Source: Saccostrea echinata (lineage: Eukaryota). Taken from it: a stretch of DNA of 64,000 nt. The stretch spans positions 10,602,001-10,666,000 of the forward strand of contig NW_026889764.1 in the NCBI RefSeq assembly GCF_033153115.1, in the 5' to 3' direction. The translations under genes and the position numbers were made by a program. Below the pieces are notes generated by a model. That model was not told the DNA's origin. It did not search any database and saw only the letters and a list, made by a program, of their open reading frames with translations. Shown here piece after piece: positions 14,155 to 63,712 of this stretch. Numbering within the stretch: position 1 is the first letter of the stretch; every line of letters begins with the position of its first letter.

Positions 14155-15344
14155 CTAGAAGAAAAGAATTGGGTCATACTGATTGGCGAATTTAACTCCG
14201 TCCACTCTGCTCCTATTGTTTAAGTCAGCATAGATTCTGACGTGTATGAACTGGGGTCGATGGCCTCCTCCTATTTTTACCTGATTAACAAAGAATTTTT
14301 GACGGAGATTAAATATAATGATGAATGTTCGAGAAATATGTAATAAATCGATATTTCTGGTATTTATTTATCATCTATTTGAAGTTTTGTCTATCTATAT
14401 TCAAATAATCATTTCATAAGGATTCCTAAGATTTATTATCAATTTTAATGGTAGTAATCATGCACTTAAACAACCAAGATACTTGAAACCATTTTTATCA
14501 GAATTTAGAATAAGTTATATAGTATTTATTTAAAGAAAACTCATGCTTTTCAAAGGTATGGATTAGTATCAAAGAAATTCTTTCATTTTGAATAGATTTT
14601 CATCCTGTTTAGAATTAATACCTTGATAAAGTAGTTAGTTCCTGCGACCAGCTGTTCTCTAAATACCAAAGCTTTCATTCGTCCAATTGGTTCCAGTATA
14701 TCTGGAGGAAGCTTTCGAATAATTGCGTTACGATTCTGAAATGTATCAATTCTCAGTAGTAAGTTTCTCTCATATTTTCTTACAGTTTTACCGTGTAGTC
14801 AATTAAATGGACAAATTAAAATATTTTTTTCTGATTTTTTTACTTGCAACATAGTACCTTTAAGTAATAAGTTATATATTTTAGCTTAGTTTTTGGGATT
14901 GTCTATCTGCTACACAGTGTAATAAGATTCAGTTTAAATTAATGGTTATAATGGATCTTCATGTTTTTGCTTTTACAGTTCATAAGTTGTGACCAACAAT
15001 CAATTATAATTAATCAAAGAAATGTAAACATTTAGAAGACTATAGATTGATGAGTTTCAATTCTAAAATGAACATTTTTGCTTTATATAAATATCATTTC
15101 CTAACCAAATTTTACGGAAAAAATTATAAAGGTTTTTTTATTTAATTGATCGACTACACAAAATGCTGCAATGTCTCTTGTACACTTTTTGAATTTAACT
15201 TACCGCTTGTACCAAAGCCTGTACCCCAGGTGTTGCAAATTGTTGTTCTCCTAGACCCCCTGTTTTAAAACCTCTTATGACGTATTAAGTCTCTAAAAAG
15301 ACAACCAAAATAAGGCTCAACGAAAAAATGTGCAATCGTTTCAT
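14155..15344 (-). pseudogene. Stefin-like cystatin A with signal-peptide-like leader; premature stop in exon 1
   Basis: Exons 15344-15204, 14735-14622, 14280-14155, GT-AG, phase 0. MKRLHIFSLSLILVVFLET*YVIRGFKTGGLGEQQFATPGVQALVQA/NRNAIIRKLPPDILEPIGRMKALVFREQLVAGTNYFIK/VKIGGGHRPQFIHVRIYADLNNRSRVDGVKFANQYDPILFF; TAA at 15287-15285. Confidence 0.85.
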
Positions 15345-16375
15345 CGTGAACAAATTGTTGACAGGAATGATGTTAAGACAGCTTCTCGGCTCTATTTATA
15401 TCACCTGTTTGATGTCCACATGTTGCAAATTTAGGGTAATTTTGCATTTAGCTCATCTGAATTAGAAATTTTTTATTCAAATTTGTTCCCCGATCTCTGT
15501 TTCATATGTAAGTCCAGTATCTCGAAGAATGATTCTTAAAACTTCACTTTCCTCTTTTGAAGAAACGACTCCAGTCGTAAAAATACATGCCACACAACAT
15601 TATGTTTAAAATGGAAATCGCATAAAAGAATGTCTACATGTGTTTGTATATAAAAAAGAGAGAAATATACATTAGATAAGACAAAGACATCGTCCTCAGG
15701 AGCAATAGCATTGGATCCTGTATCCAATGAAATGTTTCATAGATAAAATGTTTTAAAAAATCTAATATGGTGTTGTTTTATTTTTTATAAAGATGAGTTC
15801 TTACATACTTGTTAAGATCATTTTCTCTGCCCAATTCTCTTATAGAGTTTTGATTTGATGATAAGGATGAGAAAATACTTTGACTCAAATAGGTTTTGAA
15901 AATAAGTATCAGCGTCTCACCTTGTCATTCAGATGATTGATTAAAGTGAAAATTACATGTAATAGTTAAAGTATTTGGTGCTTAAATATTGATTATTTGT
16001 TTTATTTGTTAAAACTTGTTTCTAGCAAGAGTACCCAGGAAAAAAAACTTATAAAGCATATATATAATGGGGCCGACCATTTTGTATATTTTTTAAAAAA
16101 ATATTTACTGTACACAAATCTGCATGAATATAAGGGTGTGTCTCTGATGTAGCAGCAATTACTTTCGAATAGAAATCAACATCAATCTTCTCTTGAGGTC
16201 ATTCCTTATGAACCTTTAAATAAAGCAAAACAACCTTAGGGTATCACAAAAGTTCAGGTCACGAATTAATAATCATCAATATGGTTTGCAAGAGGGATCA
16301 AGATCACCTGTTACAAATTACACAAACATTCGGCTATTATTAATTACATTGGTCAGTATATCATAAAGACCAATA

Positions 16376-17423
16376 ATGGTGAACCTCAAGGGTTGCCTCT
16401 TTTTGTTCCTTTCTTTAGCAGGTTTTGTCGATTCTGCAGTCTATGGTGGTTATGGTCCCGAAGTTCCTGCTACCCCAAATATACAGACATTGGTAAACAA
16501 GGTAAATTTGGTCGCTTATTTATCATTTTCTGACGTTGGACAAACATGTAAATGTAAGATTCTTTGCAGAACATTTTGCTTAATATTCAATGCACCGTTT
16601 CGAATTTTAATCGTCTTTAATGATATGAAATGTATGACCTGAATATTTCCAAAATATCGATTTTATTTTTCAGGTTGGATATTTTTAATTTAAGAAATAT
16701 TTGTAAATATCTGATATGTTATACGCTGATCAATCAATATTATTTATCAAAATACTTCAGCACTATGGAGACATCTACAGACTTCTACCACTTGGATACT
16801 ACCAAACAGTACCCGTGACGCCATCTCTAAAAGCATATAGTTATCGCATGCAGATCGTGGCAGGGACCAACTACCTGATAAAGGTCTTTAAATAATTAAA
16901 ATTTAATAGATTACAAGATCTTAATTGATTTTGACAAATATAATTTGCTCGGTTTGTTTACAGAAGAATAACCAATGATAAATAATGTTTGTTCATACTC
17001 CGCTACTGGTGAAACCAGACAATAGGTTTCCTCTCCGTCCGTCCGTCTATCTGTGTGTCTTGCCTGTATTTCAGTCAGTTTGCCACCGCTTGTTTTTCAC
17101 TACGTTTTCTTTCTAAAAGCTTGCGTTTATTGGGCTGATCTTTATTGTAATAGTCTATTTTAATGATTAAATATCCCAATTTTTCCGCTTTATTTATATT
17201 TGATATTATTGCCTCAGGGAACTCAGTTTTGTTCGCATGTATGTAATACTATTTTTGTTGAATTTTTGTTTTTAATTGTTTTATAAGGAATGTGCTAGAA
17301 AGCATATTATTAATTCAAATACGTTTATTTTTGTAGATAAATACGGGCTATAACCGATTCATATATGTTACAATTTACAAGGACCTGTCCAACAACTCGA
17401 GAGTGACCAACATAAGTTTTTGA
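16376..17423 (+). CDS. Predicted secreted stefin-like cystatin B, 111 aa, C-terminally short
   Basis: Exons 16376-16501, 16761-16883, 17337-17423. MVNLKGCLFLFLSLAGFVDSAVYGGYGPEVPATPNIQTLVNK/HYGDIYRLLPLGYYQTVPVTPSLKAYSYRMQIVAGTNYLIK/INTGYNRFIYVTIYKDLSNNSRVTNISF. Confidence 0.85.
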
Positions 17424-17879: not shown

Positions 17880-19150
17880 TGTCAAGATAACAAACAGTAA
17901 TCGTACTCAGATGTCCATGTAGGCAATTCAAATTGTAAGGAGCAAAGCCAAGATGGACCTCTGAAAACAGAGGTGGGAATTGGTGGCATGGAGGATTACA
18001 GTGTAAACATTCCTTGTAGACCGAACACACTCGAAGTCTATGCTAGGGTAAACGGAAAAATCCGTGGACAATTCAGTGTAAAAATTATGGTCTAAATATT
18101 TCTAAGATAAAAGTCAGTCAACATTCGACTTAACGCTAGATTGTATATGCTAAAAATGCCATAGAATTTGCGAAATATTTACCTTTCACGAGATTGTTGA
18201 TATCCATGTATCATCAACTTATTTTTCAATAGCTTTTAGAAATTCTTTGTTCGTGGAACATGCTCTTGAGTATCGAATCAAGTGGGAGATATAAACTCCA
18301 TATGCAGGTGATAATGGTATATTGATTCATAAATAAAGGATGTTGACGATAGAAAAGTTGGTCTACACATATTTCATAAAGTTTAGCTTTTAGTTTGCCT
18401 TCAATGTCTTTCTCTAATAAAATATCCAAATATGAATCATGTGTCAGATTCTGTGGTGTCTTTTCTTTCTAGTTCAAAGGGACATATTGAATCAATGTAA
18501 GAATGAAAATAAATATTGTCAATTGATAAAACGTCGTCGATATATCTAATTTTTTTTTTTTTCATGTAGGCGTTTTTGAATAAATTTTCTTCATATGAAT
18601 ACAAAAACAGGTCGGCTAATAACGGGGCACAATTATTAATCATGGAAATTCTAGCACATTTTTGGAAGACCTGGTCTCCAAAAACTAGATAGATACTGTC
18701 AAAGAGAAACTCAAGCATTTTGTTTATATAAACCTCTGGAACTTGTGTATAGAATCAGCATGTTTTTTTTAACAAAATAAGTTAGCAGATGAAGATTTAC
18801 GACTGGTTTTAATTTTTACTGAAATCGTCTATGATGTCAAAAAGCATGGTCTTTAATTTATCGTGTTGAATGGTTGTAGAAAGTGCTGAAATTCATACGT
18901 TTTGATTTTATTAATTTTAGTGAGATTGCTAATTTTCTGAAAATTCGTTGGAAGTTTGAAGCATTCACATCTGATTAAAACCACTTCTCGAATATGTTGT
19001 TGTTCAATACTAGTACTCCTGAAGTTTTTTCCTTCACTGCTATTCATATTATATGAGGAATAAAGAAAAATCTTGATAGAACATTTACTAGAACCCTCTA
19101 TGTATCCTCGTAAAGATTTTTTATGAAGTTTAGGAATCTACTATGTAGGT
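17880..19150 (-). mobile_element. Decayed Penelope-like retroelement (RT)
   Basis: ORF pieces NCAPLLADLFLYSYE..RYIDDVLSIDN..ELERKDTTES and DILLEKDIEGKLKAKLY; frameshifted. Confidence 0.8.
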
Positions 19151-19295: not shown

Positions 19296-19944
19296 TTAGA
19301 AGTATACGATTGGGTCATACTGAGCCACAACTTTGACATCCTCCACCTTACTACGATTATTCAGACCTGTGTATATCTTCACATGTAAGTACCGAGGGCG
19401 AGTACCTTGCATTTTTACCTGAAAAAGCAAATGATTACCTGAGTTAAAAATTTGTTTTAAGAGCATGAAATTCATGTAACTCAACGAAAATTCTTTAGTT
19501 TTCTTGCTGCATATTCTGATAAATTTAAATTTTCTAGATGTTTACATACCTTGATAAAGTAGTTTGTTTCTCTCACAACCTGCTTTCTAAACACTTGAGC
19601 CTTCAAAGGTCCGAAAGGTCCGTTCATATACGATGGTAATTTACGGATAATGGCGTCCCTATTCTATAAGAAGATGATATTGACGACTTTGAAAAAATTA
19701 TTTTCTCAGTTCATTCAACTATATACATGTAATTTAACTTATGAATATAATATCAAAAGATTATATTATATCAGAATAAAAGGGGAAAAGTGAAATTAAT
19801 TGCGTCTATTTAGCATACCTTTTGAACGAGGGCCTGTTCGCCGGGCCCTGCATACTCCTGTGGACCGAGACCTCCGGGAGTGCAGTATGTCTCAGTGATG
19901 ATCGCCAAGAGGAGACCAAGAGCAAATACGGAAAAAACGTTCAT
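19296..19944 (-). CDS. Predicted secreted stefin-like cystatin C, 120 aa, atypical QVVRE loop
   Basis: Exons 19944-19819, 19663-19550, 19418-19296. MNVFSVFALGLLLAIITETYCTPGGLGPQEYAGPGEQALVQK/NRDAIIRKLPSYMNGPFGPLKAQVFRKQVVRETNYFIK/VKMQGTRPRYLHVKIYTGLNNRSKVEDVKVVAQYDPIVYF. Confidence 0.9.
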
Positions 19945-21771: not shown

Positions 21772-23038
21772 ATGGCAATTCGTGTCACAGTGGTTCTCAC
21801 TTTGGTGTGTTTGGCGGTCATCAGTGTGAATGCGTTTCGTCGTCCCGGAGGACTAAGTAGAACAAAACCTGCAACCCCAGAAATCCAGGGACTTGTTAAT
21901 TCCGTAAGTAAAAATAACATGATCAATAATTAATATTTGAATCAATCTCTAAGCAAGCTATCCAAATGTCGTAATGTAAAATGGTTATCGGCTAAGACAG
22001 CCACTTCTTGGATTCGTTCATCAACCTATAGGATACTATAATACTACTTTACAGAAATATTATTTCTGCATCAGGAGTACAAATATATTGGACTACGTTC
22101 TAAGTTTCAGCAGGTTCCACGACTTTAACGTAGCTCTAAAAATGGGTAAAAATTGATGCAAAATTTTCAAAAGATAAGATGCTTTGAGAAATATTTGCGT
22201 TTTAAGTACGTTATTTTGCGTGAAAATAAAACGATTAAGTAAAAATAGATATCGTTTATAAAGAACATGTTTTAAAGGGAAAAATCAATTTTACAAAAGT
22301 GTTGAAGAATAAGAACTGGTTGATTATATTATTTGAAATTATCATGTAAAATCATCACTTTTCTCCTTTGACCATGTGTAACATAGAAAAAAAAATGTTT
22401 GCGAGGATAATCACATATAGAATCTTTTTGTAAAATATTTTTTTTCAATTATTTAATCATTGTAAACGAAAAAAAAAAGTATATTATTAAATTGATCACA
22501 TGCAGGTGCGAGGGCAAATAATCAGTAAGCTCCCCCTAGGATACGACAGAGAACAATACTTACCATTGACAGCTCGTTCATACAAAGAGCAGATCGTCTC
22601 CGGCAAAAACTATTTCATCAAGGTAAAATCAATGCTTACATATTATGCATAATAAAATGAATTTATATAATTCATATTTTAAACTTCTGCATTTCGAATC
22701 ACATATACCTTATTTTTTTTAACATGGATGTCTCAAAAAGAAAAATCTTTGAATTCATGGAATTGTGGCTTAGTGTACAATGAGTTGCATACAGTAATAT
22801 AAATATATATGCAGACATTTTTTGTACATTGTAAAAAGCACCATTTATTTATATTTAAATTCATTTATTATCAAATGAATTCGAGAACTCATATTTGTAT
22901 ATTTGTTTTAAATTGCAGATTCAGACAGGACCAATGAGATATATTCATGTAAGAATATACAAACCACTGATTGGTTTTACTTCCGTGCACAGTGTCCAGT
23001 TGCAGAAATCCCTCTTGGATCCGATCGAATATTTTTAA
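21772..23038 (+). CDS. Predicted secreted stefin-like cystatin D, 122 aa, basic
   Basis: Exons 21772-21903, 22506-22622, 22919-23038. MAIRVTVVLTLVCLAVISVNAFRRPGGLSRTKPATPEIQGLVNS/VRGQIISKLPLGYDREQYLPLTARSYKEQIVSGKNYFIK/IQTGPMRYIHVRIYKPLIGFTSVHSVQLQKSLLDPIEYF. Confidence 0.92.
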
Positions 23039-28195: not shown

Positions 28196-29378
28196 ATGGC
28201 AAATCGTGTAGCAGTGGCTTTCATTTTAGCTTGTATTGCTTTCATAAGTGCAAATGCTGTTATTCGACGTGTCGGAGGAATAGGTAGAACAAAACCTGCA
28301 ACTCCAGAAATCCAACAACTTGTGAATTCCGTAAGTAAAAATTAAATAAATTTTCAAAAGTTCAAGTATTGCTCAAAGTTTTTGTTTTATGTCAAATTTT
28401 TCTTACTTCTGAGGCACGTAAGTGTTTACAGAGAGACTACTGACACAAAACACTTTTAGTTCGTTGTCTACCCGGAAGATTTTCAATTTTTTCCCTGCGT
28501 CACAGTTACAAAGGCACAAGATATATTAAAAAATTGTTACCTTGAGTAAATTTCTGCACACATTAATTTTAGCTCTGAATATTTAGATTCGCTAATAAAA
28601 ATACTTCATTAAGACAGGATTTTTCTCTTTTATGGTATCCATGATTTTCCTCTCAGTTTAGAATATTTTTATCATATGTCCTTTCTTTGCATCAGCATGA
28701 AGCAATTAAATAAACAGTTGGTGTATGTAATGATTTAAAGGCATTTCTTCTACAAAGTGTCCAAAAATTACCACAGAAACAAAAAGTACATGTATCTGTT
28801 AACGGGTCGCCTTACAATACTTATCACAAACCAATTTTGTTAGGTACTAAGTATTTATCGAACTTCTCGTATGCAGGTACGATGGCAAATAATCAGTCAA
28901 CTTCCCCTAGGATACAACAGAGGGCAATACCTACCACTAATAGCTCGTTCATACAAAGAGCAGGTAGTCTCCGGCAAAAACTATTTCATTAAGGTAAATA
29001 TTGACTTAAATGCAAATATGAAGTGAATAATGATAATAATATTTTTTTCACTTTCTGTCATTTTGTTTCACTACTGAAACAGTGTGAGTTTTCTCATAGA
29101 CTTAAATGGGGCTGTGTCTTTTAGTGTTGTGTTGCATGCAGCGCCCAAAAAGCAGAAAATTTTGTATGAAAAATTCATACATGCTATTCCATATTGAGAT
29201 ATGTCAGATATCGAATGAATTATGGATCTAATATGTGAACATTTTTTCTAAATAACAGGTTCAAACAGGACTCATGAGGTATATTCACGTTCGAATATAT
29301 AGGAAATGGAATGGATTCACTTCTGTGCATGGTGTCCAGTTGCAAAAATCCCTCTGGGACCCGATCGAATATTTTTAA
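28196..29378 (+). CDS. Predicted secreted stefin-like cystatin E, 123 aa, strongly basic
   Basis: Exons 28196-28330, 28877-28993, 29259-29378. MANRVAVAFILACIAFISANAVIRRVGGIGRTKPATPEIQQLVNS/VRWQIISQLPLGYNRGQYLPLIARSYKEQVVSGKNYFIK/VQTGLMRYIHVRIYRKWNGFTSVHGVQLQKSLWDPIEYF. Confidence 0.92.
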
Positions 29379-30949: not shown

Positions 30950-33945
30950 TCTAAACTTTTTAATTACAAAAAACTCTACAGTGCTTAGATATTGGAACAT
31001 CTGAAACATAATCCTCCAATGTGATCATGTTCTTCACCCTACTACTATAGCCTTGCCGGATACGTCATTACTGGTGACGTTAATAGTTAATAATGAGGAT
31101 TTTCAATCACTTATTTTGAAAGAGCCAAAATTTAGGGATCCCCGATCTTTCAAATGGTGACATAATTTCATAAATATTACGAATTCTGTGGAAGGTGATA
31201 GGCCAAACATGTAAAAGCCTTGACACTTTGTTAGGATGGACTAAATGTATCAGATGGACGTTGAAATCACGCATTAAGAGATATAATCAATAATTTCAAT
31301 ACGTAAGATTTTTCAACACTTTATACAGCCATTCCCCACGAAAAATTTAAGTCCAGGCTTTCTGACATCATAGACAGCTGCTTTTTCAATAAAAATGGAA
31401 CTCGTTTATTTACTTTTCTTAAGCTTGTCATTGGTAACTTCCAAAAATTATTTCGTAAAAAAACATTCCGATTTGACACACAAGCAGGCTTCTCCATAAG
31501 CCTTTTAACGTGGCGGCCCCGCCACAATCAAATTTTGTAGAGACACGGTTAAAAAATCAGCACCATAGTTCCTCCACAGTTAAAATATATGCGTCACAGT
31601 AAGATCGTCGTTGTCAGTATGATGAATACATAAATTTATAAATCAAATGAACCTCAATGAATTATGTACCGTTTTTCAGTTTCTAATGCTAAACTGTTAA
31701 ATTTACTCTAATTGTTTGGCTTGCACCATTATCTTCTAGACCTCCCTGGACACATGAATGAAAAGAGACAATCAATTTTTTTCACGCTTGACAATAATTA
31801 CAAATGAAATTTTAAATATCAATTAATTCATGCTTTAATAGTTCTGCAGATAAACACGTCTCTAAAATTGCATCGGCACTGCGACTCAAAACAATGCGCG
31901 TGTATCATTACTAATCATGTATTTTTTAATGTTGAAAAATTAGCAAAATGATTTTATGACTCGAAACTACTTAAATGTTTTTTTAATTTACAAATATCAA
32001 GATAGTTCAGTCTTTAGATCAATAGTTATCGCGAATGTGTGACCTACCAGAATTTCCTTTGTCCTTTAATGCACACTGTAGGTGAATAATTTACCTTTTG
32101 TAAACAAAGTTATTTTTTTAATTAGGGTTAAATGCATAAATTTTGTTATTACTGGGACTATTAATTTCAGATTTTATGAGCTAATATTTGTTTATTACTT
32201 GAAAAAGACGTTAATGGTAATCTAACTACCAAGCTTTATGATAAACGTGATGACTTTAACTTTTCAATCGTCAACTTCCTTTGCTTATGCAGCGATGTAC
32301 CTTCGTCACCTGCATACGGGGTTTATATCTCTCAGTTGATTCGATACGCAAGAGCATGCTCTAAGTATGTACAATTTCTAAAACGAGGTAAATTATTGAC
32401 AAACAAGTTGATGAAACAAGAATATCAGCAGTATTGTTTAAAGTCATCATTTCGAAAGTTCTATGGTCGATACAATGATCTTGTCAGCAAATACAATATT
32501 TCATTAAGTCAAATGCTGACGTTTTTCATACTAATTGTTAGGCCATTATTAACACACTGAATTGTCGGATTTTTCCGTTATTTCCCGATCATGACAAAGA
32601 GCACACGGCGTGTGTGACCGGTCTGCATGGGATGCTCACTCCTCCATGGCACCTGATTCCACCTCTGATGTTTTAGAGGTCCGTGTTTGCTCTACTTCTA
32701 TTTTGTATTGTTTAATGGACTTTTGAGCTTGAATACTGTTCGTTATCTCCATATATTTCATTCACAAGTACGTATGTGATTTTTTAAGGGGGGGGGGGTC
32801 TTTTTCACAGTATGAATATATTTTGGAAAGAACATAATTTTTGTTTTACACTATGTTTAATCTATATCGTTTAATTGTTTTTATTTTTGAATTTATTAAT
32901 CATTTTGCCAATTAATTAATGCATTTTTGTATTAAACTATTGTTTCATAGGGGCTGTGAGTTCAATTTGTTTTGGGGTTCCTTCGCGAATTAGGTCGCGC
33001 AAATGACCGCGAATATAAGCACTTCGCATAAGTTTTACGCCACAATTAAATTTGAAATGATGGAAAACCCTGCACAAGTACATGTACTCCGAAGTTGATT
33101 TTGAAAAAGATGCTTGAGTTACTGATTGACAATATCTATTTAGTTCTTGGAGATCAAGTCTTCCAACAATCTGTCGGAACTCCCATGGGTACCAATTGCA
33201 CCCCTTAATTATCGGATCTATTTTTATATTCATATGTAGCAGAATTATTGCAAAAAGTTCTACATGAGAAGAAAAAAAACACTTGCTGTTGCCAACTCGA
33301 CATTTAGATATATCGACGACGTTTTATCAATTAAAAATAGTAGCGTCCATTCATATGTAGACTCCATATATCCCAGTGAACTTGAAATAAAAGACACCAC
33401 AGAGTCTGACACATCTGTTTCATAACTGGATATTTTACAAAAAAAAATTCTTAATGGTAACCGTCAACTTCCCTTATTTATGTAGCAATATACCCTTATC
33501 ACCTACTTACTGAGTTTATCTCCCAGTTGATTCGATACACAAGAGCATGTTCTACGTACGAACAATTTCTTAAAGGAGGCAATCTATTGACAAGTTGATG
33601 AAACAAGGCTATCAACAGTCTCAATTTGCAGGTTCTTTGGTCGATACAATGACCCTGTCAGCAAATACATTCTATCATTAAATCGAAAGCTGACTGACCT
33701 TTTTCATACTAATTGTTAGGTCATTTTTTTACACACTGAATTGGATACGGAATTTTTTTTTCGTTTGCCTGATCAAAACGAGAAGTACACGGCGGGTGTG
33801 AACGGTCGACCGGGGATGCTTACTGCTTCATGACACCTAGTCCCACTTCTGATGGTTTTAGAGGTCCATGGTTTCTCTGCTCCCGATTTGTATTCTTTCA
33901 ATGGACTTTTGAGCTTGAATATTGTTCGTTATCTCCATATTTCAC
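30950..33945 (+). mobile_element. Decayed Penelope-like retroelement split by an insertion
   Basis: DFSTLYTAIPHEKFKSRL at ~31310-31360 resumes after 33072 with GTPMGTNC and RYIDDVLSI, then the family 3' tail. Confidence 0.8.
31485..33072. mobile_element. Non-autonomous hAT-like element with 6-bp TSD, containing a Penelope 3' fragment (~32200-32765)
   Basis: Ends CAGGCTTCTCCAT / ATGGAAAACCCTG; CACAAG duplicated at 31479-31484 and 33073-33078. Confidence 0.7.
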
Positions 33946-39485: not shown

Positions 39486-39697
39486 AAATAAATAAGAAAT
39501 AAAAAATAAATAAATAATAAATTTGAATAGATCAATCAATAACTTACTAAATAAGTAAACAAATTAATTTATTAATTGAATAAGTAAATTGAATAAGAAC
39601 ACATTTCCACACGGAAATGAGAGAATCTTGATTATCAGAAACAAGCAAAGTTATAATCAATTTCAGAACTGGATCATCTTATCAAACAAAAATTTCA

Positions 39698-46375: not shown

Positions 46376-47355
46376 TTAAAAGTATTCGATTGGATCGTAC
46401 TGAGCCACGAATTTCACATCCTTCACTTTACTCTGATTGTTCAGACCAGTGTATATTTTCACGTGTAAGTAGCGTGGTTGAGCACCTTGCATTTTTACCT
46501 GTAACAATATCGAAGTATAATATGAAATAAATGATTTGTAAAAAAAGATCTAATAATAAAAATAAAACTGAAAAGTTTGTTTTACATTTTGTTTTATAAT
46601 TCTACCTTTTTATGATGTTACCTTGATAAAATAGTTTGTTCCTTTCACGACCTGCTTTTTAAACACCAGGGCCTTCAAAGGTCCAAAAGGCCCCTCCATG
46701 AAAGATGGTAATCTTCGAATAATGGCGTCCCTGTTCTAAAATAATTGTATTCATTTCCTTAAATATCACAATCATTTGAAGAATTATTTTCGGAAAAAAT
46801 TAGTTAAATAAAGAAAAATTAAAATACCGTTAAGCGGGTAATTTTAGCATAGGAAATACTTGGTGAGTTCGATGTCCAAAAAAAGTAATTAATAATTTTG
46901 GCTTTATTTATTTATTTATATATTTATTTTTGGTGCATTTTCAATTTAAAATAAATATATGATTATTATTATTTTAGTTCATTCAAATTAGCAACAAACC
47001 ATCTTTTGGTAATATCACGTATTTATTTATGGTCATTGATTACACAAAACAGATAAGATGCGTTGAATTCAATAATAACCCTTCAGTCAATCTTATGGAA
47101 ATTTTGGTGCTTTAATTTTAAAAGAATCTTCTTTAATCCGCCAAAAAAAATCACAGCTTGCAAAACTTATCCTATGTACGGTGTAAAAATAAAAACGAAG
47201 AGTAAAAATTATCGCATTCTCTTGCATACCTTTTGAACAAGGGCTTGTTCGCCAGGTCCTGCATACTCCTGTGGACCGAGACCTCCGGGAGTGCAGTATG
47301 TCTCAGTGATGATCGCCAAGAGGAGACCAAGAGCAAATACTGAAAGCCCGTTCAT
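46376..47355 (-). CDS. Predicted secreted stefin-like cystatin F, 120 aa
   Basis: Exons 47355-47230, 46735-46622, 46498-46376. MNGLSVFALGLLLAIITETYCTPGGLGPQEYAGPGEQALVQK/NRDAIIRRLPSFMEGPFGPLKALVFKKQVVKGTNYFIK/VKMQGAQPRYLHVKIYTGLNNQSKVKDVKFVAQYDPIEYF. Confidence 0.92.
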
Positions 47356-49521
47356 GATGCTGTTTCGGTTTTTGGAAGTGAGGATTTCTTGTGCTTACCA
47401 TGACTTTTATAGCATATAGCCCTTTGCCCAAATGTTGCAAATGTACACTCCTGCCATAACTGAAAGTACTGTTTCACGTAGGTTAATGGTGTAAACATGG
47501 CACACAATGTGTTGTTTCTGTTCATTATTGTATCTGTGTACGTCATGTTTGTCAAGTTATCGTAATTGATAATTATGAGGTATTAATTTGCTATTAAAAT
47601 TGATTTGCATTTACCTTTTATCAATTGTTTAATGAGTATTATCCAAAATTATTAAAATCTGATTTGTTTTAGAAAAAAATTAGAAAATTATTTAGCATTC
47701 AGATATATGTCAAAAAGGTTCAGTTCTTTCCTTCATAAAAAAATAATACCTAAACCCTTTTAAAAAATCAACCAATTTTTATTATGTTCAGTATTCAAAT
47801 AAAAAATAGTAAATAAAGTGTATAATTTGTACCCGGTTTATACCTTTGGGGAATAATATATTGTACATGGGTGAGTTTTTATCAACTACTAGTAATGTAC
47901 GACATATGTTATAGTTTGATACTAAGCTGTGATTTGAAAATAAGCCGATCTTGAAAAGAAGCCCCCAATTTCTTATCAACATGTAAAGACAGATGCGGCT
48001 GATTTTCAAGGTTTAAGGGTAGTTATACCTTATTGTTCAGTAAAATGAAAGCAAAACAATATAGTCACTTTTCCCCATTTTAATATTAGACAATAGCTTC
48101 GTTACAACTGAAGGGCCGGTATTATAGAAATCTAAATAATAATACTTGTGAATTTCTTATATTTTGATATGATTTTTCTCTGACATTGAAAGTAAATTTC
48201 TAAGAAACTTTACAGAGAATTGTATTTCATTTAAAATATTTGAATCTGCATTATCTTTTGCCAAACATGAATGATTCAACAACATACAGTTTATATTTAA
48301 GAAAGCACTCGTACACAATATAGAATAGATCATTGGTGGTTTTAAGCAAAGAAACAGTTTGTTTTTCTGTTATTTCTTGATTTATCGTAAAGCAAAGAAG
48401 ATAATTAAGTGCATATCATTATTTGGTTCTATTCTACTTAATTGAAATTCATTTGTTTGATATTAATTTGTTATATTTTGTTTATTTTGACACAGTTTTA
48501 ATAAAAGCAAAATGCGTAACTGAATAAAAATCAATCATCATTAAATGCAATAAGAATTATGTTTTTGTATTCCTTAGATAATGTTTTTCATTTCTATTAC
48601 GACCTTTTTTTTGGTTGATGAGAAATCAGCTTTTCTGAAACATTTCAGCTTTTCTGAAACATTTCTTTTGTACAGTACCTGCATCAACAAAAGCCGGCTC
48701 TACATTTTTTGATAGGTGTAACAGATTCTAATTTTCTATTCCTAAATTTGCTAGGGAGGAAAGTCTCTTTCCTTACAAATATATAACTGATTTGGTAGTA
48801 AATTTCTGTTAAACATATCAATCGATTTTTGTAATAAATAATTTCATTAGTTTCCAATAGTAAGGTAATCAACAGAAAAGGTACATTTTGTCGAATTCTA
48901 GGAAGAATATGCTAAGTAGTAGTCATCCTTAATCTTAATCAAATATACATATTTACAAAAACTCCTTCTCAACAAAACTTTTTTGTTTTACAACAAGTTT
49001 CTCCAATTGAAAATAGGTCTGTAAATCGTTTTTACATACGTGTGCATAAGAAGAAGGAAACAATTCATATTGTAAGACATTCATGATAATTGTTTGATAT
49101 TTGGGACTTCATAAAGCATTTCATTTATACTTTTTATAAGGAAGAAATGCTGCATGGTATCATTAAACTTAATGTGTCAGTGTAAACTTTAATACAACAA
49201 AAGAATAAAAACATGGTAACTTCTGAATGCCATTTTTGGACTGTAACACTGCTATACAAAAAGAGAATTTAATAAAATATTTTCATACTTAGTTTAAATA
49301 AAATGACAAAAAACTAAACTTTGTACAATAATGATGAAAACTGAAAATATCTATATCACCTGTTTATTAGTGGCTAGAGGCCAAATTTTTAATTACTTTT
49401 AGGAGCATGCTGCTCTAATAATGTATTTAACAGCTGCGACGTTTTCAAACAATCTTCCCATTGTTTTCACCAGTATATAAACACTCAATTTCTAGCATTG
49501 ATACTGATATTCTAAATCACA

Positions 49522-50331
49522 ATGAAGGTCTCTGTTGCAATTATTTTCAGTTTAGCGGTCACTGCTGTGTTTCTTGTGAATGCTACATCTATTGCTGGAG
49601 GACTTGGTAAAGCCAAACTCGCCACTCCAGAAATCCAACAACTTGTTGATTCTGTAAGTATGGCATATATACTGTAGTATATTTCATGTTTATAATATTG
49701 ATTTTCAGGAAAAGCCCCTCGGTATCTATTCTAACGATCATCTTTGAAAAATAATGAAATTAAATCATATGTACTGTGCACTGAATTTTTACTGCAACAA
49801 GTAACCAGTTTTTGAATAAATATCTAATGTATATATCACAATTAATGATACAGGTGCGCGATGATATAATCAGCCATCTTCCTATTGGATACGACAGAGA
49901 AATGCCGCTGCCACTTAAAGCTCGTTTTTACAGGGAACAAGTGGTCGCTGGCACGAACTATTTTATCAAGGTACAGATTTTAAAAATCTATTACAAACCT
50001 TAAATGCCAATCATATTTCATGTACATTATTTTCATATTTTTGCTCTCTTTGTTGCATATACTGTGTTTGAAATTTGAAAAGTTTTCTTTTCTGTGTAAA
50101 TATCGATTTTAATCTAATAATTTGCATTTATATATTTGTTTTTCAAGTAACATTTGTTATTAATATCAACAGTTTGTAACATTTAATAGTTTATTCTTCT
50201 ATCAATTACAGATTCAAACAGGCCCCTTAAGGTTTATCCACGTTAGAATTTATGAAAATCTTGATGGAGTCGCTTCTGTAACCGGTATCCAGCTTCAAAA
50301 ATCCATTAGAGATCCGATTGAATACTTTTAA
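49522..50331 (+). CDS. Predicted secreted stefin-like cystatin G, 122 aa
   Basis: Exons 49522-49653, 49854-49970, 50212-50331. MKVSVAIIFSLAVTAVFLVNATSIAGGLGKAKLATPEIQQLVDS/VRDDIISHLPIGYDREMPLPLKARFYREQVVAGTNYFIK/IQTGPLRFIHVRIYENLDGVASVTGIQLQKSIRDPIEYF; TATATAAA at ~49474; AATAAA at ~50408. Confidence 0.93.
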
Positions 50332-51063
50332 AACTGTCGTGATATTACTAAATAGTCTTTTGATATGGATATTTTTAAATGATTTGATTTCTTGCTATAA
50401 AGTAAACGAATAAAGTTTAGAAAAAGAGTTTAAGGAAAAAAATTACTTTTTTTACTTCACATGATATAACACCTAAATTTCAAAAGTTATAAGATGATAG
50501 CGGATATTGCGGTTTCACAACATCATCCAAATACTGAAATAAATGAATTTCATGACATCAATATTATTGTTTGTACATTGTATTTCCGACATTGCCTGTT
50601 GAAATAAAATATTTGCAAGTAATCCATGTGACTTAATTCCAAACAAAAGCTAAAAGGCTCAATTTTCAAATTCTACCAATAACTTTGTAGATAAAGGTAA
50701 AAAAAATATTATTGATCTTATGAAACTGTCATGTTTCCTGGTATTGAATGCATCATTAAATGCTACATTGAATGCGAAAATATTTTATGCTCATTTTTAA
50801 TAAATCATCGATTATCGATGTTTTCCAAAGAATCTGTGATTTAAGAATTAATATTCTAAGAAGTTTCCTCACAAAAAATGAGGTATATAACCAGGTATTG
50901 GTGTAAGATTCCAGGAGATGGCATTTCCTACATAATCCTATTGTGAATCTCTTGAATGGCTGATATTACAGATTTTCAGTACATAATTTCTAAAACATTT
51001 TGGATGTGATTTAGAAATCATAAGTTAGTTTTAGGGATGAATATGTTTGGTATAAAACGAAGG

Positions 51064-51098
<35 letters not shown>

Positions 51099-52308
51099 CA
51101 CATTGGCTAGGCAAAAGCACAATCAGTATTGAAAAGACCGGGGGGGGGGGGGGGAGGGGGGCTTGAATTTTAAACTACCTGATGATGCTTCCATGTCAAT
51201 ATAACAAATGGCTTTGTTGTACTTGAGAAGATTTTTTAAAAAAAAATCCCATATATTCCTTTGTAAAAATTTGATCCCTCATTGTGGCTCCTCCCTATCC
51301 CAGGGGTCATCATTTGAACAAACTTGAATCTACACTACCTGAGGATGCTTCCATATCAATATGACTAAATATAGCTTTTCTGTTCTTGAGAAGAAATATT
51401 TTTTTCTATATGTTCTTATGTAAAACTTTCCATCCCCCATTGGGCCCCATCCTACCCCTGGGGGTCATCATTTAACAAAATTGAATCTACACTACCTGAG
51501 GATGCTTCCATATCAATATGACTAAACATAGCTTTTCTGTTCTTGAGAAGAAATATTTTTTCTATATGTTCTTATGTAAACATTCCATCCCCCATTGGGC
51601 CCCATCCTACCCCTGGGGGTCATCATTTAACAAAATTGAATCTACACTACCTGAGGATGCTTCCATATCAATATGACTAAACATAGCTTTTCTGTTCTTC
51701 AGAAGAAGATATTTTCCTTTATATTTCTATATAAAACTTTGATCCTCCATTGCAGCCCCGCCCTACCCCCGGGGGTCATTATTTGAACAAATTTGAATCT
51801 ACACTACCTGAGGATGCTTCCATATAAATATGACTCATCATAGCTTTGCTGTTCTTGAGAAGAAGATTTTTAAAGATTTTTCCTATATATTTCTATGTAA
51901 AACTTTGATCCTCCATTGTGGCCCCACCCTACCCCCGGGGGTCATGATTTGAACAAACTTGAATCTACACTACCTGAGGATGCTTCTATATAAATATGAC
52001 TCATCATGGCTTTGCTGTTCTTGAGAAGAAGATTTTTAAAGATTTTTCCTATATATTTCTATGTAAAAATTTGATCCTCCATTGCAGCCCCGCCCTACCC
52101 CCGGGGGTCATGATTTGAACAAACTTGAATGTACACTACCTAAGGATGCTTCCACATGAGTTTCATCTTTCCTGGCCCTATGGTTCTTGAGAAGAAGATT
52201 TTTAAATGATGCCATTATTTTTTTTCAGTAATTCCTAATTATCTCCCCTTGAAAGAGGGTGTGGTCCTTCATTTGAACAAATTTGAATCCCCTTTACCCA
52301 AGGATACT

Positions 52309-53927: not shown

Positions 53928-54584
53928 TTAGAAGTATTCGATTGGATCGTACTGTGCCACAAATATGACATCTTCCACTTTACTTCGATTGTTTAAACCA
54001 GTGTATATTTTCACATGTAAGTATCGGGGCTGAATACCTTGCATTTTTACCTGAAAAATACAATAAATTGACTAATGATGTGTTAAAAGACCTTTTTACA
54101 AGGAATCGTACAACTAATTTATTTTTTTTAAGTTTTGTTAATTTATTTCTGAGTTACACTGGGATACCTTTATGAAATAGTTGGTTCCTTTCACGACCTG
54201 CTTTTTAAACACCAGAGCCTTTAAAGGTCCAAAAGGTCCCTCCATGAAAGATGGTAATCTACGGATAATGGCGTCCCTGTTCTGTAATGAGTTATATTCT
54301 TACATCATTCTAATATCAATATAATTCAAAGATTTAACTTCTAGTTAAATTTATTTAATATTCATATTTAAGTAAACTATCAAATTACGAAATAAAAGGA
54401 AAATCAAGAAATACAAAAATTAAAAAAAAGGTGGACTCCATTACGTTATCTTTCATACCTCTTCCACCAGGGCCTGTTCTCCGGGTCCTGCGAACTCCTG
54501 TGGGCCAAGACCCCCAGGAGTGCAATATGTCTCAGTGATGATCGCCAAGAGGAGACCAAAAGCAAATACAGAAATTCCGTTCAT
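53928..54584 (-). CDS. Predicted secreted stefin-like cystatin H, 120 aa
   Basis: Exons 54584-54459, 54281-54168, 54050-53928. MNGISVFAFGLLLAIITETYCTPGGLGPQEFAGPGEQALVEE/NRDAIIRRLPSFMEGPFGPLKALVFKKQVVKGTNYFIK/VKMQGIQPRYLHVKIYTGLNNRSKVEDVIFVAQYDPIEYF. Confidence 0.92.
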
Positions 54585-56897: not shown

Positions 56898-57441
56898 ATG
56901 AAGGCTTTTGTTGCAGTTATTCTCAGTTTATCGGCTTCTGCCGTATTCTTTGTGAATGCTACTGATAAACCTGTCGTTGGAGGACTTGGTAAAGCTAAAC
57001 TTGCCACAAAAGAAATCCAGGAACTTGTTGACTCTGTAAGTAAGGAAAAATAGACGCTTAGCTTTCAATATTTCAAAGTTATCATTTCTTAGGAAAACAA
57101 ACTTGACACCACATGCATTCTCTAAAACAATAGATTCTATTTTATAGAACTTTTTAAGGAAAGAAAGAAAAAACAGTTCGTAACTTGTTTTGATTTTTAC
57201 TGTAACAAATACCAGTTTTCGTATAAATACTATTTACTGTATTTTCACAATTAATGATACAGGTGCGCGATGATATAATCAGCAATCTTCCTATTGGATA
57301 CGACAGAGAGATGCCGCTGCCACTTAAAGCACGCTTCTACAGGGAACAAGTGGTCGCTGGCACGAACTATTTTATCAAGGTACAAAGATTAACAAAATCT
57401 TCATCTTTTACAAAACAATTATGTCAAAAATGCATGACTTA

Positions 57442-57479
<38 letters not shown>

Positions 57480-57757
57480 TAAATTGCCCTCTTTGTAATT
57501 AATTTTGCCAACTAGAAGTTTTTGTCATTTCAATTTATTCATACTCTTTGTAAACGTTTGTCAAGCATCATTTATTATTTGAAGCATTTTTTAAAAATTA
57601 TATTATTTCAATATTTTTATTTTCTTATCAATTTCAGATTCAAACAGGCCCACTGAGGTTTATCCACGTTAGAATATTTAAAGATCTCCAGGGTGTCGCT
57701 TCTGTTTCCGGTGTCCAGATCAACAAGCTCCTCAGAGACCCACTTGAATATTTCTAA
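56898..57757 (+). CDS. Predicted secreted stefin-like cystatin I, 124 aa
   Basis: Exons 56898-57035, 57263-57379, 57638-57757. MKAFVAVILSLSASAVFFVNATDKPVVGGLGKAKLATKEIQELVDS/VRDDIISNLPIGYDREMPLPLKARFYREQVVAGTNYFIK/IQTGPLRFIHVRIFKDLQGVASVSGVQINKLLRDPLEYF; (CT)n in intron 2. Confidence 0.93.
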
Positions 57758-58884: not shown

Positions 58885-58885
<1 letters not shown>

Positions 58886-61361: not shown

Positions 61362-62294
61362 ATGAATTCAGCTTTGGTTCTTTTCTTTGCTGTAATTTCT
61401 GTTTTTGTGTCTGTCCATGGAGATGAGGATCCCGTTCTTGGAGGGCTAGGACCCACTAAATTTGCCACCGATGAAGTACAGGATCTCATAGATTTGGTAA
61501 ATATTTTCATGTATCCATCGCTCGATTAATGAAAAAAATCTAGCTTAAGAATGTAATTAAAAAAATATATAAAATGTTATATATAATGTCCATCATCATT
61601 CTCTTTACTCACATAAAATTTTGCCTTGGTGATAATGATTTTTCAAACAAAATCTAAACTGTAATTCAATTGCAGACAATTATATTATACCTTATGGGCA
61701 AAATTTTTGTTTTCTACCAAGTTTTTAAGGGTACAGTAATAATAATTTATCTCAGTCAGAGTTATCTCTCTTATCAGAGGGTCAATGAACCTTAAGTATG
61801 AATTTACTTTCTTATTTTCACTTTCAGTTACGAGATGACATTATAAGCCAGCTTCCTATTGGATACGATCGCGAGGAACCACTTCCTGAGTTTACAGCCC
61901 GTCTGTACAGAGAACAGATTGTAGCTGGAACAAACTTCTTTGTCAAAGTATGTGTATATGACCTGATTTCAACCTTTTTAGACTAGGATATATATCAATA
62001 AAACGAATTTCGTTTTCAATAAGTATGAAATACAAAATACCAAAATACAAGTACATATTTAATGGTTGAAAAGTCATCTGCTCATTTGTATGTTATATAT
62101 CAATAATGAATTGATTACTACTAATGAGAAACGCCAATGACAATATATAACAAATGACAATTCTTTATTTGCAGGTTGAGACTGGGCCACTCCGATTTAT
62201 TCACGTCAGGATATACGTTGATCTATCTGGGGATGCCTCAGTTGATGGAGTCCAGGTTGGAAAAACCATGGGAGACCCCCTGGAGTATTTTTAG
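61362..62294 (+). CDS. Predicted secreted stefin-like cystatin J, 124 aa, strongly acidic
   Basis: Exons 61362-61496, 61828-61947, 62175-62294. MNSALVLFFAVISVFVSVHGDEDPVLGGLGPTKFATDEVQDLIDL/LRDDIISQLPIGYDREEPLPEFTARLYREQIVAGTNFFVK/VETGPLRFIHVRIYVDLSGDASVDGVQVGKTMGDPLEYF; TATAAATA at ~61313. Confidence 0.93.
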
Positions 62295-63440
62295 AATAGG
62301 ATGTGTATATTTAATATACAATGTATACAATATTTTTACAGAATTCCATTAAATAACATGTGACTTTTAAAAATGTTTATATTGTTATGTCTAAAGTAAA
62401 AAAAAAAGTGAAACTGATTTTAATACAAGAATTTTACAGAATTCCATTAAATAACATGTGACTTTTTAAAAATGTTTAGACTTTTATGTCTTTGCAACAT
62501 AAAAAAAGAGATGAAACTGATTTTAATACTTATTTTTTTACAATATATATTATTAATATCAATTTTTTCTCGCCACATTTAAACTTCTATATTGTTAATT
62601 AATAAATACTTTGCTTAACTGCTCAACAACGTTTCCAGACGATTGAGCATCAATCCCCTCAAGGCATATTTATCTGTTGTAACAACATTCATAAAATCAT
62701 TTATCTCCATGCCCATCTATTGAAACCTACATCAATATATTTTACATCTGTCAGTTTTTCACTCTGCTTATTTGCTGTCCCTCTATGTTTCATTTTTTTT
62801 TAAATAAATAATAACTAATTACTAATAAAAAAAAATAATAATAATTGGCTTCCTGTCTTAGCAATCGTAAACCAACTGCTATAGGACAGACTCTACAATA
62901 GAACTCGTCCCTCCGAGTCTATTAGCCGCCAATCTTTTGATTAATTAGGAAACAGCATTCATTGTTTTACTTGGACATGTATATACTACTGGAAAGACCC
63001 TAGGAAAAGTAGTTCTAGCTACTATCTATGGACTACAGCTAATTCCTCTAATTGAGGAACCCGTAGTGCCGCTTACTCAACTTACTCTCGTATTTAATTA
63101 TAGAGCCCTTAATGCCGTATATCCAATCAATAGCCTGTTCCACAGAGCAATGAGAGGACGACGAATAGTAAAACATTTATCTGTATTAATTATATCACCT
63201 TTTCATTTCTCGATTTTTTTAAGAAAAGTTTCCACGTACTTCCATAATCACACAATGCAGAGACTGATATAAAAAATTCCATCGCTAGACCAATCGTAAT
63301 ATATGCTGGTTGATAAGGGGAGCCATAAATTTCGGACAAGTGTCTTGCAGTCATTTGATAAGTGAAATTTATAATTTCGTAATCTGTAATTATGTACCAT
63401 CTGCTGCTATCTGTGTCATAGTCGGGCTTAGTGTCACATT

Positions 63441-63712
63441 ATGCTTATCATCATGAAGGATAACACGTTTCTGATTCCAACACTCTTGCTCTGTTTGTCT
63501 GTCTGTAGTTTTTACGTGGTACATGGAGCTTGGTTAGGACAGACGAAACCCGCCACTTTCCCGGTGAAAAAGATGGTTGAAGTGGTAAGAATTTTTGCGT
63601 TTCTGTTTTTCGAGCAGGAAAAATTATAAGCCATGACAAATGCCTTTATCATACATGCATGTACTATATTCATCATCAGTATATATTAGCAATTTGCAGG
63701 TACGTAGTATCA
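63441..63712 (+). CDS. Stefin-like cystatin K, partial (exon 1 and start of a probably interrupted exon 2)
   Basis: Exon 1 63441 (or 63453)-63584, (MLII)MKDNTFLIPTLLLCLSVCSFYVVHGAWLGQTKPATFPVKKMVEV|gtaaga; acceptor tttgcag then VRSI at 63700, then repeat sequence. Confidence 0.65.

What the first reader, a model, noticed from the sequence alone, without database searches (positions are those of the whole stretch)
14155..63712. Cluster of at least 11 signal-peptide-bearing, disulfide-free stefin-type cystatin genes
Seen: 10 complete three-exon models (9 intact) plus partial K and relic Z. Each has a ~20-aa hydrophobic leader, GG, QxVxG-xNYFIK, HVxIY and DPxxYF, and no Cys pair in the mature part. 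Established: type-1 cystatins (stefins, MEROPS I25A) are normally cytosolic and leaderless; human CSTB has phase-0 introns after codons 22 and 56 (..TNYFIK|V), the positions matched here. Secreted cystatins are usually type 2 with disulfides, although leader-bearing stefins are known in some trematodes. Inference: a lineage-specific battery of secreted stefins against extracellular papain-family proteases (mucus, haemolymph or shell defence). It is nearly invisible in the ORF track.
Basis: partly seen in the sequence, partly recalled or inferred. Interest (0 to 1): 0.78.

Follow-up and report, generated by a model that had tools for sequence, protein, structure and literature searches.

The report
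Oyster cluster of leader-bearing stefin genes
This oyster carries eleven neighbouring copies of a normally single, cell-internal protease-inhibitor gene (stefin), each with an added export leader; the genes are real and conserved across oysters but are already in public annotation.

Summary
The window is Saccostrea echinata chromosome DNA. It carries ten three-exon stefin-type cystatin genes (A-J) plus exon 1 of an eleventh (K), whose other exons lie 6.8 kb past the window end.

- All introns are GT-AG, phase 0, at the same two places as in this genome's own leaderless stefin on another contig.
- Each exon 1 is about 20-25 codons longer than in that gene, and the extra stretch is a hydrophobic leader.
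- From the GG onward, none of the ten scored genes (A-J) has a cysteine.
- Whole-length RefSeq products match human cystatin A at E 3.6e-15 and a type-2 cystatin only at 0.29.
- Paralogues show dN/dS 0.05-0.25 at dS about 0.5-0.7, so they are old, constrained genes.

- A has a stop in its leader.
- B lacks the C-terminal motif, and so does its Crassostrea orthologue.
- C and K lack QxVxG.
- Relic Z was not found.

Novelty is limited. Six models equal RefSeq "cystatin-A-like" proteins exactly, and orthologues exist in five other oysters. A separate leader-bearing oyster stefin (CgCytA) and a shell-matrix "cystatin A2" are in print. Secretion and targets remain inferred: no RNA run was listed and no SignalP was available.

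The scan has two related notes: one on this same stretch, and one on a stefin paralogue elsewhere in this genome.

The parts
14155..15344 (-). Gene A (beta subfamily). Exons 15344-15204, 14735-14622, 14280-14158, plus stop codon. The leader exon is broken by an in-frame TAA at 15287-15285.
   Evidence: RefSeq XP_061179463.1 (P0149) holds exons 2 and 3 but uses another, leaderless first exon at 16824-16777 on the minus strand. The S. cucullata orthologue P0150 has an intact leader.
16376..17423 (+). Gene B (gamma type). Exons 16376-16501, 16761-16883, 17337-17420. It has NYLIK, ends early without the C-terminal motif, and carries two NxS sequons in exon 3.
   Evidence: The Crassostrea angulata protein P0028 (XP_052679202.1) ends at the same place.
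19296..19944 (-). Gene C (beta). Exons 19944-19819, 19663-19550, 19418-19299. It has QVVRE in place of QxVxG.
   Evidence: Exact tiling on XP_061179232.1 (P0146, 'uncharacterized protein'). dN/dS 0.13 against F.
21772..23038 (+). Gene D (alpha). Exons 21772-21903, 22506-22622, 22919-23035.
   Evidence: dN/dS 0.22 against E.
28196..29378 (+). Gene E (alpha). Exons 28196-28330, 28877-28993, 29259-29375. It has Trp where the others have Leu in the second loop.
   Evidence: The S. cucullata relative P0137 has the same Trp.
46376..47355 (-). Gene F (beta). Exons 47355-47230, 46735-46622, 46498-46379.
   Evidence: Exact tiling on XP_061179234.1 (P0143). Pfam PF00031 22.6 bits, cut-off 22.2.
49522..50331 (+). 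Gene G (alpha). Exons 49522-49653, 49854-49970, 50212-50328.
   Evidence: Exact tiling on XP_061179006.1 (P0131). PF00031 27.1 bits. PDB cystatin A 3.6e-15.
53928..54584 (-). Gene H (beta). Exons 54584-54459, 54281-54168, 54050-53931.
   Evidence: Exact tiling on XP_061179235.1 (P0154). dN/dS 0.06 against F.
56898..57757 (+). Gene I (alpha). Exons 56898-57035, 57263-57379, 57638-57754.
   Evidence: Exact tiling on XP_061179007.1 (P0129). dN/dS 0.25 against G.
61362..62294 (+). Gene J (alpha, divergent). Exons 61362-61496, 61828-61947, 62175-62291. It has NFFVK.
   Evidence: Exact tiling on XP_061179236.1 (P0156).
63453..63584 (+). Gene K, exon 1 only (leader, no GG). Exons 2 and 3 lie outside the window at G000:C15:10672399-10672518 and 10672612-10672728. 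It has QVDFG and ends EPIQAF.
   Evidence: The Ostrea edulis K-like protein is P0032.

Best explanation
This is an old, oyster-specific expansion of the stefin (type-1 cystatin) lineage. An ancestral copy of the leaderless three-exon stefin gene gained about 20-25 extra codons at the 5' end of exon 1. These encode an ER signal sequence, and the gene then multiplied into a cluster.

Shown: gene structure, type-1 identity, the N-terminal extension, purifying selection, and conservation in six oyster species.

Inferred: the leader is cleaved a few residues before the GG. That would leave a mature N-terminal 'trunk' about as long as in cytosolic stefins. The roughly 100-residue, cysteine-free protein would then travel the secretory pathway. 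It would block papain-family cysteine proteases with the usual three-part wedge: the N-terminal Gly, the QxVxG hairpin and the second hairpin.

The cluster holds distinct conserved types:
- alpha (D, E, G, I, J).
- beta (A, C, F, H), with a conserved NxS sequon in the second hairpin.
- a C-terminally shortened type (B).
- a type with all contact motifs degenerate (K).

This suggests a division of labour, and for B, C and K perhaps altered or lost inhibition.
For: - Structure: ten models with GT-AG phase-0 introns, at the same places as the genome's canonical stefin with exons of 22/34/41 codons.
- Independent models: 6 of 10 models tile exactly on RefSeq proteins.
- Type 1: the exon-2 profile against PDB gives stefin B/A at 1e-8 to 1e-7 and cystatin C at 0.1. 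The exon-3 profile hits two stefin-type chains at their C-termini. Whole-length G gives cystatin A 3.6e-15 over residues 24-118 against 2-94. PF00031 is above cut-off for G and F.
- Leader: the best 10-residue hydropathy is 2.46-3.21 in all ten exon-1 peptides A-J, against 0.37-1.03 in five leaderless controls. Each of A-J has a small-residue (-3,-1) site 3-7 residues before GG.
- No Cys from GG on in 10 of 10.
- Constraint: dN/dS is 0.06 (F-H), 0.13 (C-F), 0.11 (C-H), 0.25 (G-I) and 0.22 (D-E), at dS 0.47-0.69.
- Conservation: named relatives were found only in S. cucullata, C. gigas, C. angulata, C. virginica and O. edulis. In the tree, the 24 oyster cluster-type rows form one group (92/88) and beta has 100/96 support.
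- Core promoters: a TATA-like box sits at -55/-56 in all four beta genes and at -48 to -58 in G, I and J.
- Extracellular type-1 cystatins in C. gigas: shell water-soluble matrix (PMC3361287, passages read).
Against: - No signal-peptide predictor, structure prediction or RNA evidence could be obtained. Cleavage, secretion and expression in this species are therefore inferred.
- A signal sequence shows ER entry, not release from the cell.
- Several genes depart from the inhibitor pattern: C (QVVRE) and K (QVDFG, no GG) lack the QxVxG contact motif, B lacks the C-terminal motif, and A's leader exon is broken.
- The NxS sequon of beta and B lies in the second binding loop. If used, it could hinder protease binding.
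- Pfam scores are near or under the cut-off for some members (C 16.6, B-like 20.1).
- The published extracellular oyster stefins may belong to other paralogues. CgCytA's orthologue lies on contig 12, outside this cluster.
Confidence: 0.75

Rival explanations
1. The proteins enter the ER but act inside the cell. They would be sorted to lysosomes or haemocyte granules to hold the oyster's own cathepsins in check, and would not be released as an extracellular defence.
For: A leader shows only ER entry. A tick paper cites knock-down of the related CgCytA as raising bacterial clearance, which points to regulation of endogenous proteolysis (PMC10808623, passage read).
Against: I noticed no obvious retention or sorting motif, but ran no dedicated scan for one. 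The proteins end in the usual stefin C-terminus. A type-1 cystatin was found in C. gigas shell matrix. This rival is not exclusive of secretion.
Confidence: 0.3
2. Part of the family has left protease inhibition for another extracellular role, such as matrix component, microbe binding or opsonin. This applies especially to B, C, K and the sequon-bearing beta type.
For: C and K lack QxVxG, and K also lacks GG. B lacks the C-terminal motif, and this is conserved in C. angulata. There is a conserved NxS in the second loop. C is nevertheless under constraint (dN/dS 0.11-0.13).
Against: 9 of 11 genes keep QxVxG and 10 of 11 keep GG. Exon 2 is the most conserved exon (dN 0-0.01 for F-H and G-I).
Confidence: 0.2
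3. The genes are type-2 cystatins that lost their disulfides.
For: They have a leader, as type-2 cystatins do. Gene E has Trp in the second loop.
Against: PDB: cystatin A 3.6e-15 against cystatin D 0.29. They have the stefin C-terminal motif and stefin length. The intron places are those of the genome's own stefin. No type-2 sequence was available for a joint tree.
Confidence: 0.02
4. The array is decaying pseudogenes, or the leader is an annotation artefact.
For: A is broken. No RNA run was listed.
Against: Nine ORFs are intact with canonical splice sites. dN/dS is 0.05-0.25 at dS about 0.5-0.7. Leader-bearing orthologues occur in five other oysters. No in-frame Met lies between the leader and GG.
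Confidence: 0.03

Closest known systems
Classical stefins (cystatin A/B, MEROPS I25A)
   Same: Single ~100-residue domain, N-terminal GG, QxVxG, second loop with Leu, and a C-terminal D-P-[IL]-x-[YF]-F ending. No disulfides. Introns at the same two places as this oyster's own leaderless stefin. Best PDB matches are cystatin A/B.
   Different: They carry an N-terminal hydrophobic leader of about 20 residues and 4-5 extra codons in exon 2. There are eleven clustered copies, whereas Kordis & Turk 2009 (PMC2784779, passages read) state that stefins stay single or few-copy and that nearly all metazoan stefins lack a signal peptide.
Cystatin-like stefins (CyL-stefins; FhCyLS-2 of Fasciola hepatica; Busa et al. 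2023, PMC9986714; abstract, section 10 and passages read)
   Same: A stefin-type sequence with an obligatory signal peptide; secreted in the fluke.
   Different: CyL-stefins are defined as lacking the C-terminal D/E-x-L-x-Y/H-F motif and typically have two disulfides. That paper finds them only in foodborne flukes and myxozoans. The oyster genes keep the motif (9 of 11) and have no Cys. They match cystatin A at 3.6e-15, while 6i1m is not among matches up to E 1 and Smolstatin scores 0.09.
CgCytA, 'cystatin A' of Crassostrea gigas (AXU25928.1 = P0121; Mao et al. 2018, Fish Shellfish Immunol 75:190; paper not held, seen only as citations)
   Same: An oyster stefin with a hydrophobic leader, GG, QVVAG, a DEITYF ending, and Cys only in the leader.
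   Different: It is a different lineage. Its orthologue here is a single three-exon gene at G000:C12:12346894-12348118, not in this cluster. In the tree it falls on the side of the canonical stefins. That it was found in plasma is my recollection, not a call.
'Cystatin A2' of the C. gigas shell water-soluble matrix (Oliveira et al. 2012, PMC3361287; passages read)
   Same: A type-1 cystatin with QxVxG found outside cells in an oyster.
   Different: It was identified from ESTs that I could not see, so which paralogue it is remains unknown. The paper does not mention a signal peptide (0 occurrences). The spot was about 22 kDa.

Membership tests
Type-1 cystatins / stefins (I25A) | Cystatin domain (PF00031), single, about 100 residues | tested here: met
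   On RefSeq products: G 27.1 and F 22.6 bits (cut-off 22.2); C 16.6 and the B-like protein 20.1 are under it. Single exons alone score 13.9-19 bits, under the cut-off.
Type-1 cystatins / stefins (I25A) | Closer in sequence to stefins than to type-2 cystatins | tested here: met
   cystatin A 3.6e-15, stefin B 2e-11, cystatin D 0.29; stefins 1e-8 to 1e-7, cystatin C about 0.1.
Type-1 cystatins / stefins (I25A) | N-terminal Gly and QxVxG hairpin | tested here: met
   GG in 10 of 11 genes (not K). QxVxG in 9 of 11 (not C or K)..
Type-1 cystatins / stefins (I25A) | No disulfide bridges | tested here: met
   0 Cys from GG on in 10 of 10 genes; K was not scored.
Type-1 cystatins / stefins (I25A) | C-terminal motif D/E-x-L-x-Y/H-F (as worded in PMC9986714) | tested here: met
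   D-P-[IL]-x-[YF]-F at the very end in 9 of 11 genes, with Ile for Leu in 7. B lacks it and K has EPIQAF.
Type-1 cystatins / stefins (I25A) | No signal peptide; cytosolic | tested here: not met
   All ten scored exon-1 peptides (A-J) have a hydrophobic N-terminal extension absent from five leaderless controls. K's leader was read by eye only. This is a heuristic, not SignalP.
Type-1 cystatins / stefins (I25A) | Stefin gene structure (two phase-0 introns, after codons 22 and 56 of the leaderless gene) | tested here: met
   (canonical gene, exons of 22/34/41 codons) compared. Exon 2 ends at stefin B residue 56.
Cystatin-like stefins (CyL-stefins) | Obligatory signal peptide | tested here: inconclusive
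   A leader is present by heuristic. No predictor and no N-terminal sequencing were available.
Cystatin-like stefins (CyL-stefins) | Lacks the classical C-terminal motif | tested here: not met
   The motif is kept in 9 of 11 genes.
Cystatin-like stefins (CyL-stefins) | Typically two disulfides; groups with FhCyLS-2 and the myxozoan proteins | tested here: not met
   No Cys. 6i1m is absent from matches up to E 1 and Smolstatin scores 0.09.
Type-2 cystatins (I25B) | Two C-terminal disulfides, PW in the second loop, central insert | tested here: not met
   No Cys. Leu, not Trp, in the second loop in 9 of 10 genes. Length and alignment are those of stefin A without an insert.

The most novel reading that the evidence does not exclude
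Oysters have turned the stefin lineage, elsewhere single-copy and cytosolic, into their main secreted cysteine-protease-inhibitor system.

The system would have four anciently separated types:
- alpha.
- beta, with an N-glycan site in the second binding loop.
- a type without the last strand (B).
- a type with all contact motifs lost (K).

Alpha and beta genes are kept head-to-head and may act as a co-expressed pair. The family may stand in for type-2 cystatins, the kind of functional take-over that Kordis & Turk predicted where one lineage is lost.
Probability: 0.2. Interest if true: 0.6.

Novelty: new member of a known kind. Interest (0 to 1): 0.42.

Why it matters
Textbook and review statements say that stefins are leaderless, cytosolic and single or few-copy in animals (PMC2784779, PMC9986714). 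The only named signal-bearing group, the CyL-stefins, is defined by loss of the C-terminal motif and is restricted to parasites.

A free-living mollusc with eleven clustered, constrained, leader-bearing stefins that keep the classical motifs shows a different route. Here signal gain happened on an otherwise classical stefin and was followed by birth-and-death expansion.

For oyster biology, this gives a defined gene set to look for in plasma, mucus and shell proteomes. It can also be tested against the cysteine proteases of oyster parasites and against the oyster's own cathepsins. The gain is modest because the genes are already in RefSeq and one related oyster protein has been studied.

Tried and rejected
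RNA support: the look-up of sequencing runs on 46300-50400 listed no run, so read laying could not be called.

Conservation of the head-to-head pairs elsewhere is therefore untested. I have only same-contig lengths and neighbouring accession numbers.

Type-2 cystatins in this genome: PF00031 over the whole genome gave only the canonical stefin exon (1 match among 12 candidates scored). It did not even ring on the cluster exons, so it is too insensitive to show that type-2 genes are absent. I had no tool-given type-2 sequence to search with.

Haemolymph proteomics of Saccostrea glomerata (PMC11480171, PMC11750097; passages read) report a 'cystatin B-like' 11-kDa protein matched to a C. gigas entry, alongside ribosomal and muscle proteins. 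I take this as the canonical stefin and not as evidence for this cluster. Their spreadsheets are supplements and were not seen.

Positive selection: rejected for whole genes (dN/dS 0.25 or less). No per-site test was done.

D aligns only with E, while C aligns with F and H, and dS is 0.51 for C-F against 1.5 for D-G. The C/D pair is therefore not a simple copy of F/G.

Literature: I found no paper describing this cluster or oyster leader-bearing stefins as a family. Subscription journals are mostly not held. Mao et al. 2018 could not be read. Supplements that may bear on the claim were not seen: taxon lists of Busa 2023 (Fig. S3, File S1) and Kordis & Turk 2009 additional file 9.

The third homologous-protein search, both protein-atlas runs and one paper search were left unused.

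Full report
WHAT IS THERE

Reading the DNA around them gave ten three-exon models, A to J. Every intron is GT..AG and phase 0. Introns are 117-602 nt and exons 126-141 / 114-123 / 117-123 nt.

Profiles built from the ten exon-2 and ten exon-3 peptides (A1, A2) were scanned over every stop-to-stop fragment of the window. They find exactly those ten exons of each kind and nothing else significant.

An eleventh gene, K, has its leader exon at 63453-63584. Its exons 2 and 3, intact and with normal splice sites, lie 6.8 kb further on, outside the window. The space between E (29 kb) and F (46 kb) holds retroelement and transposase fragments.

JOINED STEP LEFT OUT

Exon peptides were searched one by one or as exon alignments. 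All whole-length comparisons used database proteins that the tools returned.

ORGANISM AND EXISTING ANNOTATION

The exon-2 profile, run against 1.84 billion representatives, gave 115 proteins at E 0.001 or better. Those matching the whole exon, where a source names them, are all from oysters.

Two word searches with returned proteins gave 15 of 31 and 12 of 22 candidates. Among them are RefSeq proteins of Saccostrea echinata. The three exon peptides of C, F, G, H, I and J tile these proteins exactly and completely (6 of 10 models; accession numbers).

NCBI's pipeline already models these genes with my exon borders, mostly as 'cystatin-A-like'.

- A is annotated with another, leaderless first exon, because its leader exon has an in-frame stop.
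- For B, D and E no S. echinata protein was among my hits. That does not show they are unannotated.

TYPE 1, NOT TYPE 2

Exon 2 alone matches stefin B residues 21-56. The exon-2 profile gives stefins at 1e-8 to 1e-7 and cystatin C at about 0.1. The exon-3 profile matches the C-terminal ends of two stefin-type chains.

The RefSeq product of G matches cystatin A at 3.6e-15 over residues 24-118 against 2-94. The segment around GG and the following helix is nearly the same as in the human protein. The best type-2 match is cystatin D at 0.29. PF00031 is above its cut-off for G and F, and below it for C and for the B-like protein.

THE LEADERLESS PARENT FORM

The exon-2 profile finds 12 places in the 923-Mb genome: eleven in this cluster and one on contig 12. 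That one is a leaderless stefin starting MMCGG, with exons of 22, 34 and 41 codons and phase-0 introns.

The cluster genes have their introns at the homologous places. They carry 20-25 more codons at the start of exon 1 and 4-5 more in exon 2. The simplest origin of the leader is a 5' extension of exon 1; this is inference.

LEADERS

No predictor was available. By a simple heuristic, all ten exon-1 peptides A-J have:
- an uncharged run of 13-27 residues;
- a best 10-residue hydropathy of 2.46-3.21 (five leaderless controls: 0.37-1.03);
- a small-residue (-3,-1) site 3-7 residues before GG.

Cleavage there would give a mature N-terminus about as long as in cytosolic stefins. From GG onward there is no Cys in any of the ten. 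K's row in that call was mis-framed and is void. K's exon 1, read, also begins with a hydrophobic stretch but has no GG.

FUNCTIONAL CONSTRAINT AND AGE

Paralogues are 70-77% identical in DNA, introns included.

| Pair | dN/dS |
|---|---|
| F-H | 0.06 |
| C-F | 0.13 |
| C-H | 0.11 |
| G-I | 0.25 |
| D-E | 0.22 |

These values are at dS 0.47-0.69; more distant pairs are saturated. Exon 2 is the most constrained.

In a tree of 35 database proteins, the 24 oyster cluster-type rows form one group (92/88). Beta is monophyletic (100/96). G and I each pair with S. cucullata orthologues. Crassostrea and Ostrea sequences sit inside alpha and beta. The types therefore predate the split of these genera. 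The tree is midpoint-rooted, holds no type-2 sequence, and rests on about 126 columns.

VARIANTS

- A is broken in the leader.
- B ends 11 codons early. The C. angulata protein P0028 ends at the same place, so this looks like a conserved short form, though only one full-length orthologue was seen.
- C has QVVRE yet is constrained.
- K lacks GG and QxVxG and ends EPIQAF. An O. edulis K-like protein exists (P0032).
- Beta genes and B carry an NxS sequon in the second hairpin. It is also present in the beta proteins of four other oysters.

ARRANGEMENT

The order along the window is A(-) B(+) C(-) D(+) E(+) ... F(-) G(+) H(-) I(+) J(+) K(+). That gives four head-to-head pairs, with 1.0-2.3 kb between the start codons.

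- F/G and H/I are copies of one two-gene unit of about 7.4 kb.
- The other pairs do not share that simple history.
- Each gene has its own TATA-like box about 50-58 nt before the ATG in 7 of 11 genes. The position is identical (-55/-56) in the four beta genes. In AT-rich DNA such matches are common; it is the fixed position that counts.

WHAT IS KNOWN

- Busa et al. 2023 define CyL-stefins. They have a signal peptide, no classical C-terminal motif and usually disulfides, and occur only in flukes and myxozoans. The oyster genes fail two of these features.
- Kordis & Turk 2009 state that stefins stay single or few-copy and that a gained signal peptide is seen in a few protists and is absent from nearly all metazoan stefins.
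- CgCytA of C. gigas (P0121) is a leader-bearing stefin. Its orthologue here is on contig 12 and it is a separate branch. The paper was not held.
- Oliveira et al. 2012 found a 'cystatin A2' in C. gigas shell matrix.
- Leader-like N-termini also occur on stefin-like database proteins of a tardigrade, a bryozoan and a shark.

VERDICT

This is a real, conserved, oyster-wide family of leader-bearing classical stefins. It is correctly read by the first stage but already annotated, and it is partly foreshadowed in print. I file it as a new member of a known kind. Interest is moderate, mainly for cystatin evolution and oyster immunity.

Noticed in passing
L012 (G000:C12:18049937-18052981), exons at L012 664-729, 1444-1545, 1677-1799: The genome's canonical leaderless stefin (starts MMCGG). 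Exons are 22/34/41 codons with phase-0 introns. It is the only exon-2-like match outside the cluster at E 0.01 or better.
   Followed up: yes
L014/L015/L019 (G000:C12:12346894-12348118, minus strand): Three-exon orthologue of the C. gigas leader-bearing stefin CgCytA, on a different contig from the cluster. The exon-2 match was reported with one TAG inside, which I did not examine. It may be the paralogue of the scan's note s1-810103.
   Followed up: partly
window 35952-38470 (minus strand) and 40471-41505 (plus strand): Retroelement ORF fragments (RT_RNaseH 26.2 bits; RVT_1 27.3 bits, under its cut-off) and a DUF4371 / zinc-finger ORF typical of domesticated or decayed transposases. They fill the gap between genes E and F.
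   Followed up: partly
window 38862-39488 and 51251-52206: Two tandem arrays: periods 71/145/216 nt (88-96% matches) and 166 nt (about 5.7 copies, 89%). The second lies between G and H.
   Followed up: no
window 63700-63940 (intron 1 of K): Several copies, in both orientations, of a short motif of the form 'gaaaaatgaccccc...tagaa' begin right after the exon-2-like 'ttgcag gtacgt' site. This looks like an inserted repeat element that lengthened K's first intron to 6.8 kb.
   Followed up: no
window 16777-16824 (minus strand): RefSeq's model of gene A takes its first coding exon from here, antisense to exon 2 of gene B. This is probably a work-around for the stop in A's real leader exon.
   Followed up: partly
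proteins P0002 (196 aa, C. gigas K1R803) and P0124 (203 aa, C. angulata): Two-domain alpha-type stefin models. They are either fused neighbours or a real tandem-domain protein of about 22 kDa, the size of the shell-matrix 'cystatin A2' spot in PMC3361287.
   Followed up: no
protein P0001 (1411 aa, 12 matched stretches) and other multi-stretch hits: Very long proteins with up to 12 stefin-like repeats head the representative search. Their source was not looked up.
   Followed up: no
window 1-900, 3600-4100, 17880-19140, 32180-33940: Dispersed repeat family at 68-82% identity, with copies on both strands. One copy lies between B and C.
   Followed up: no
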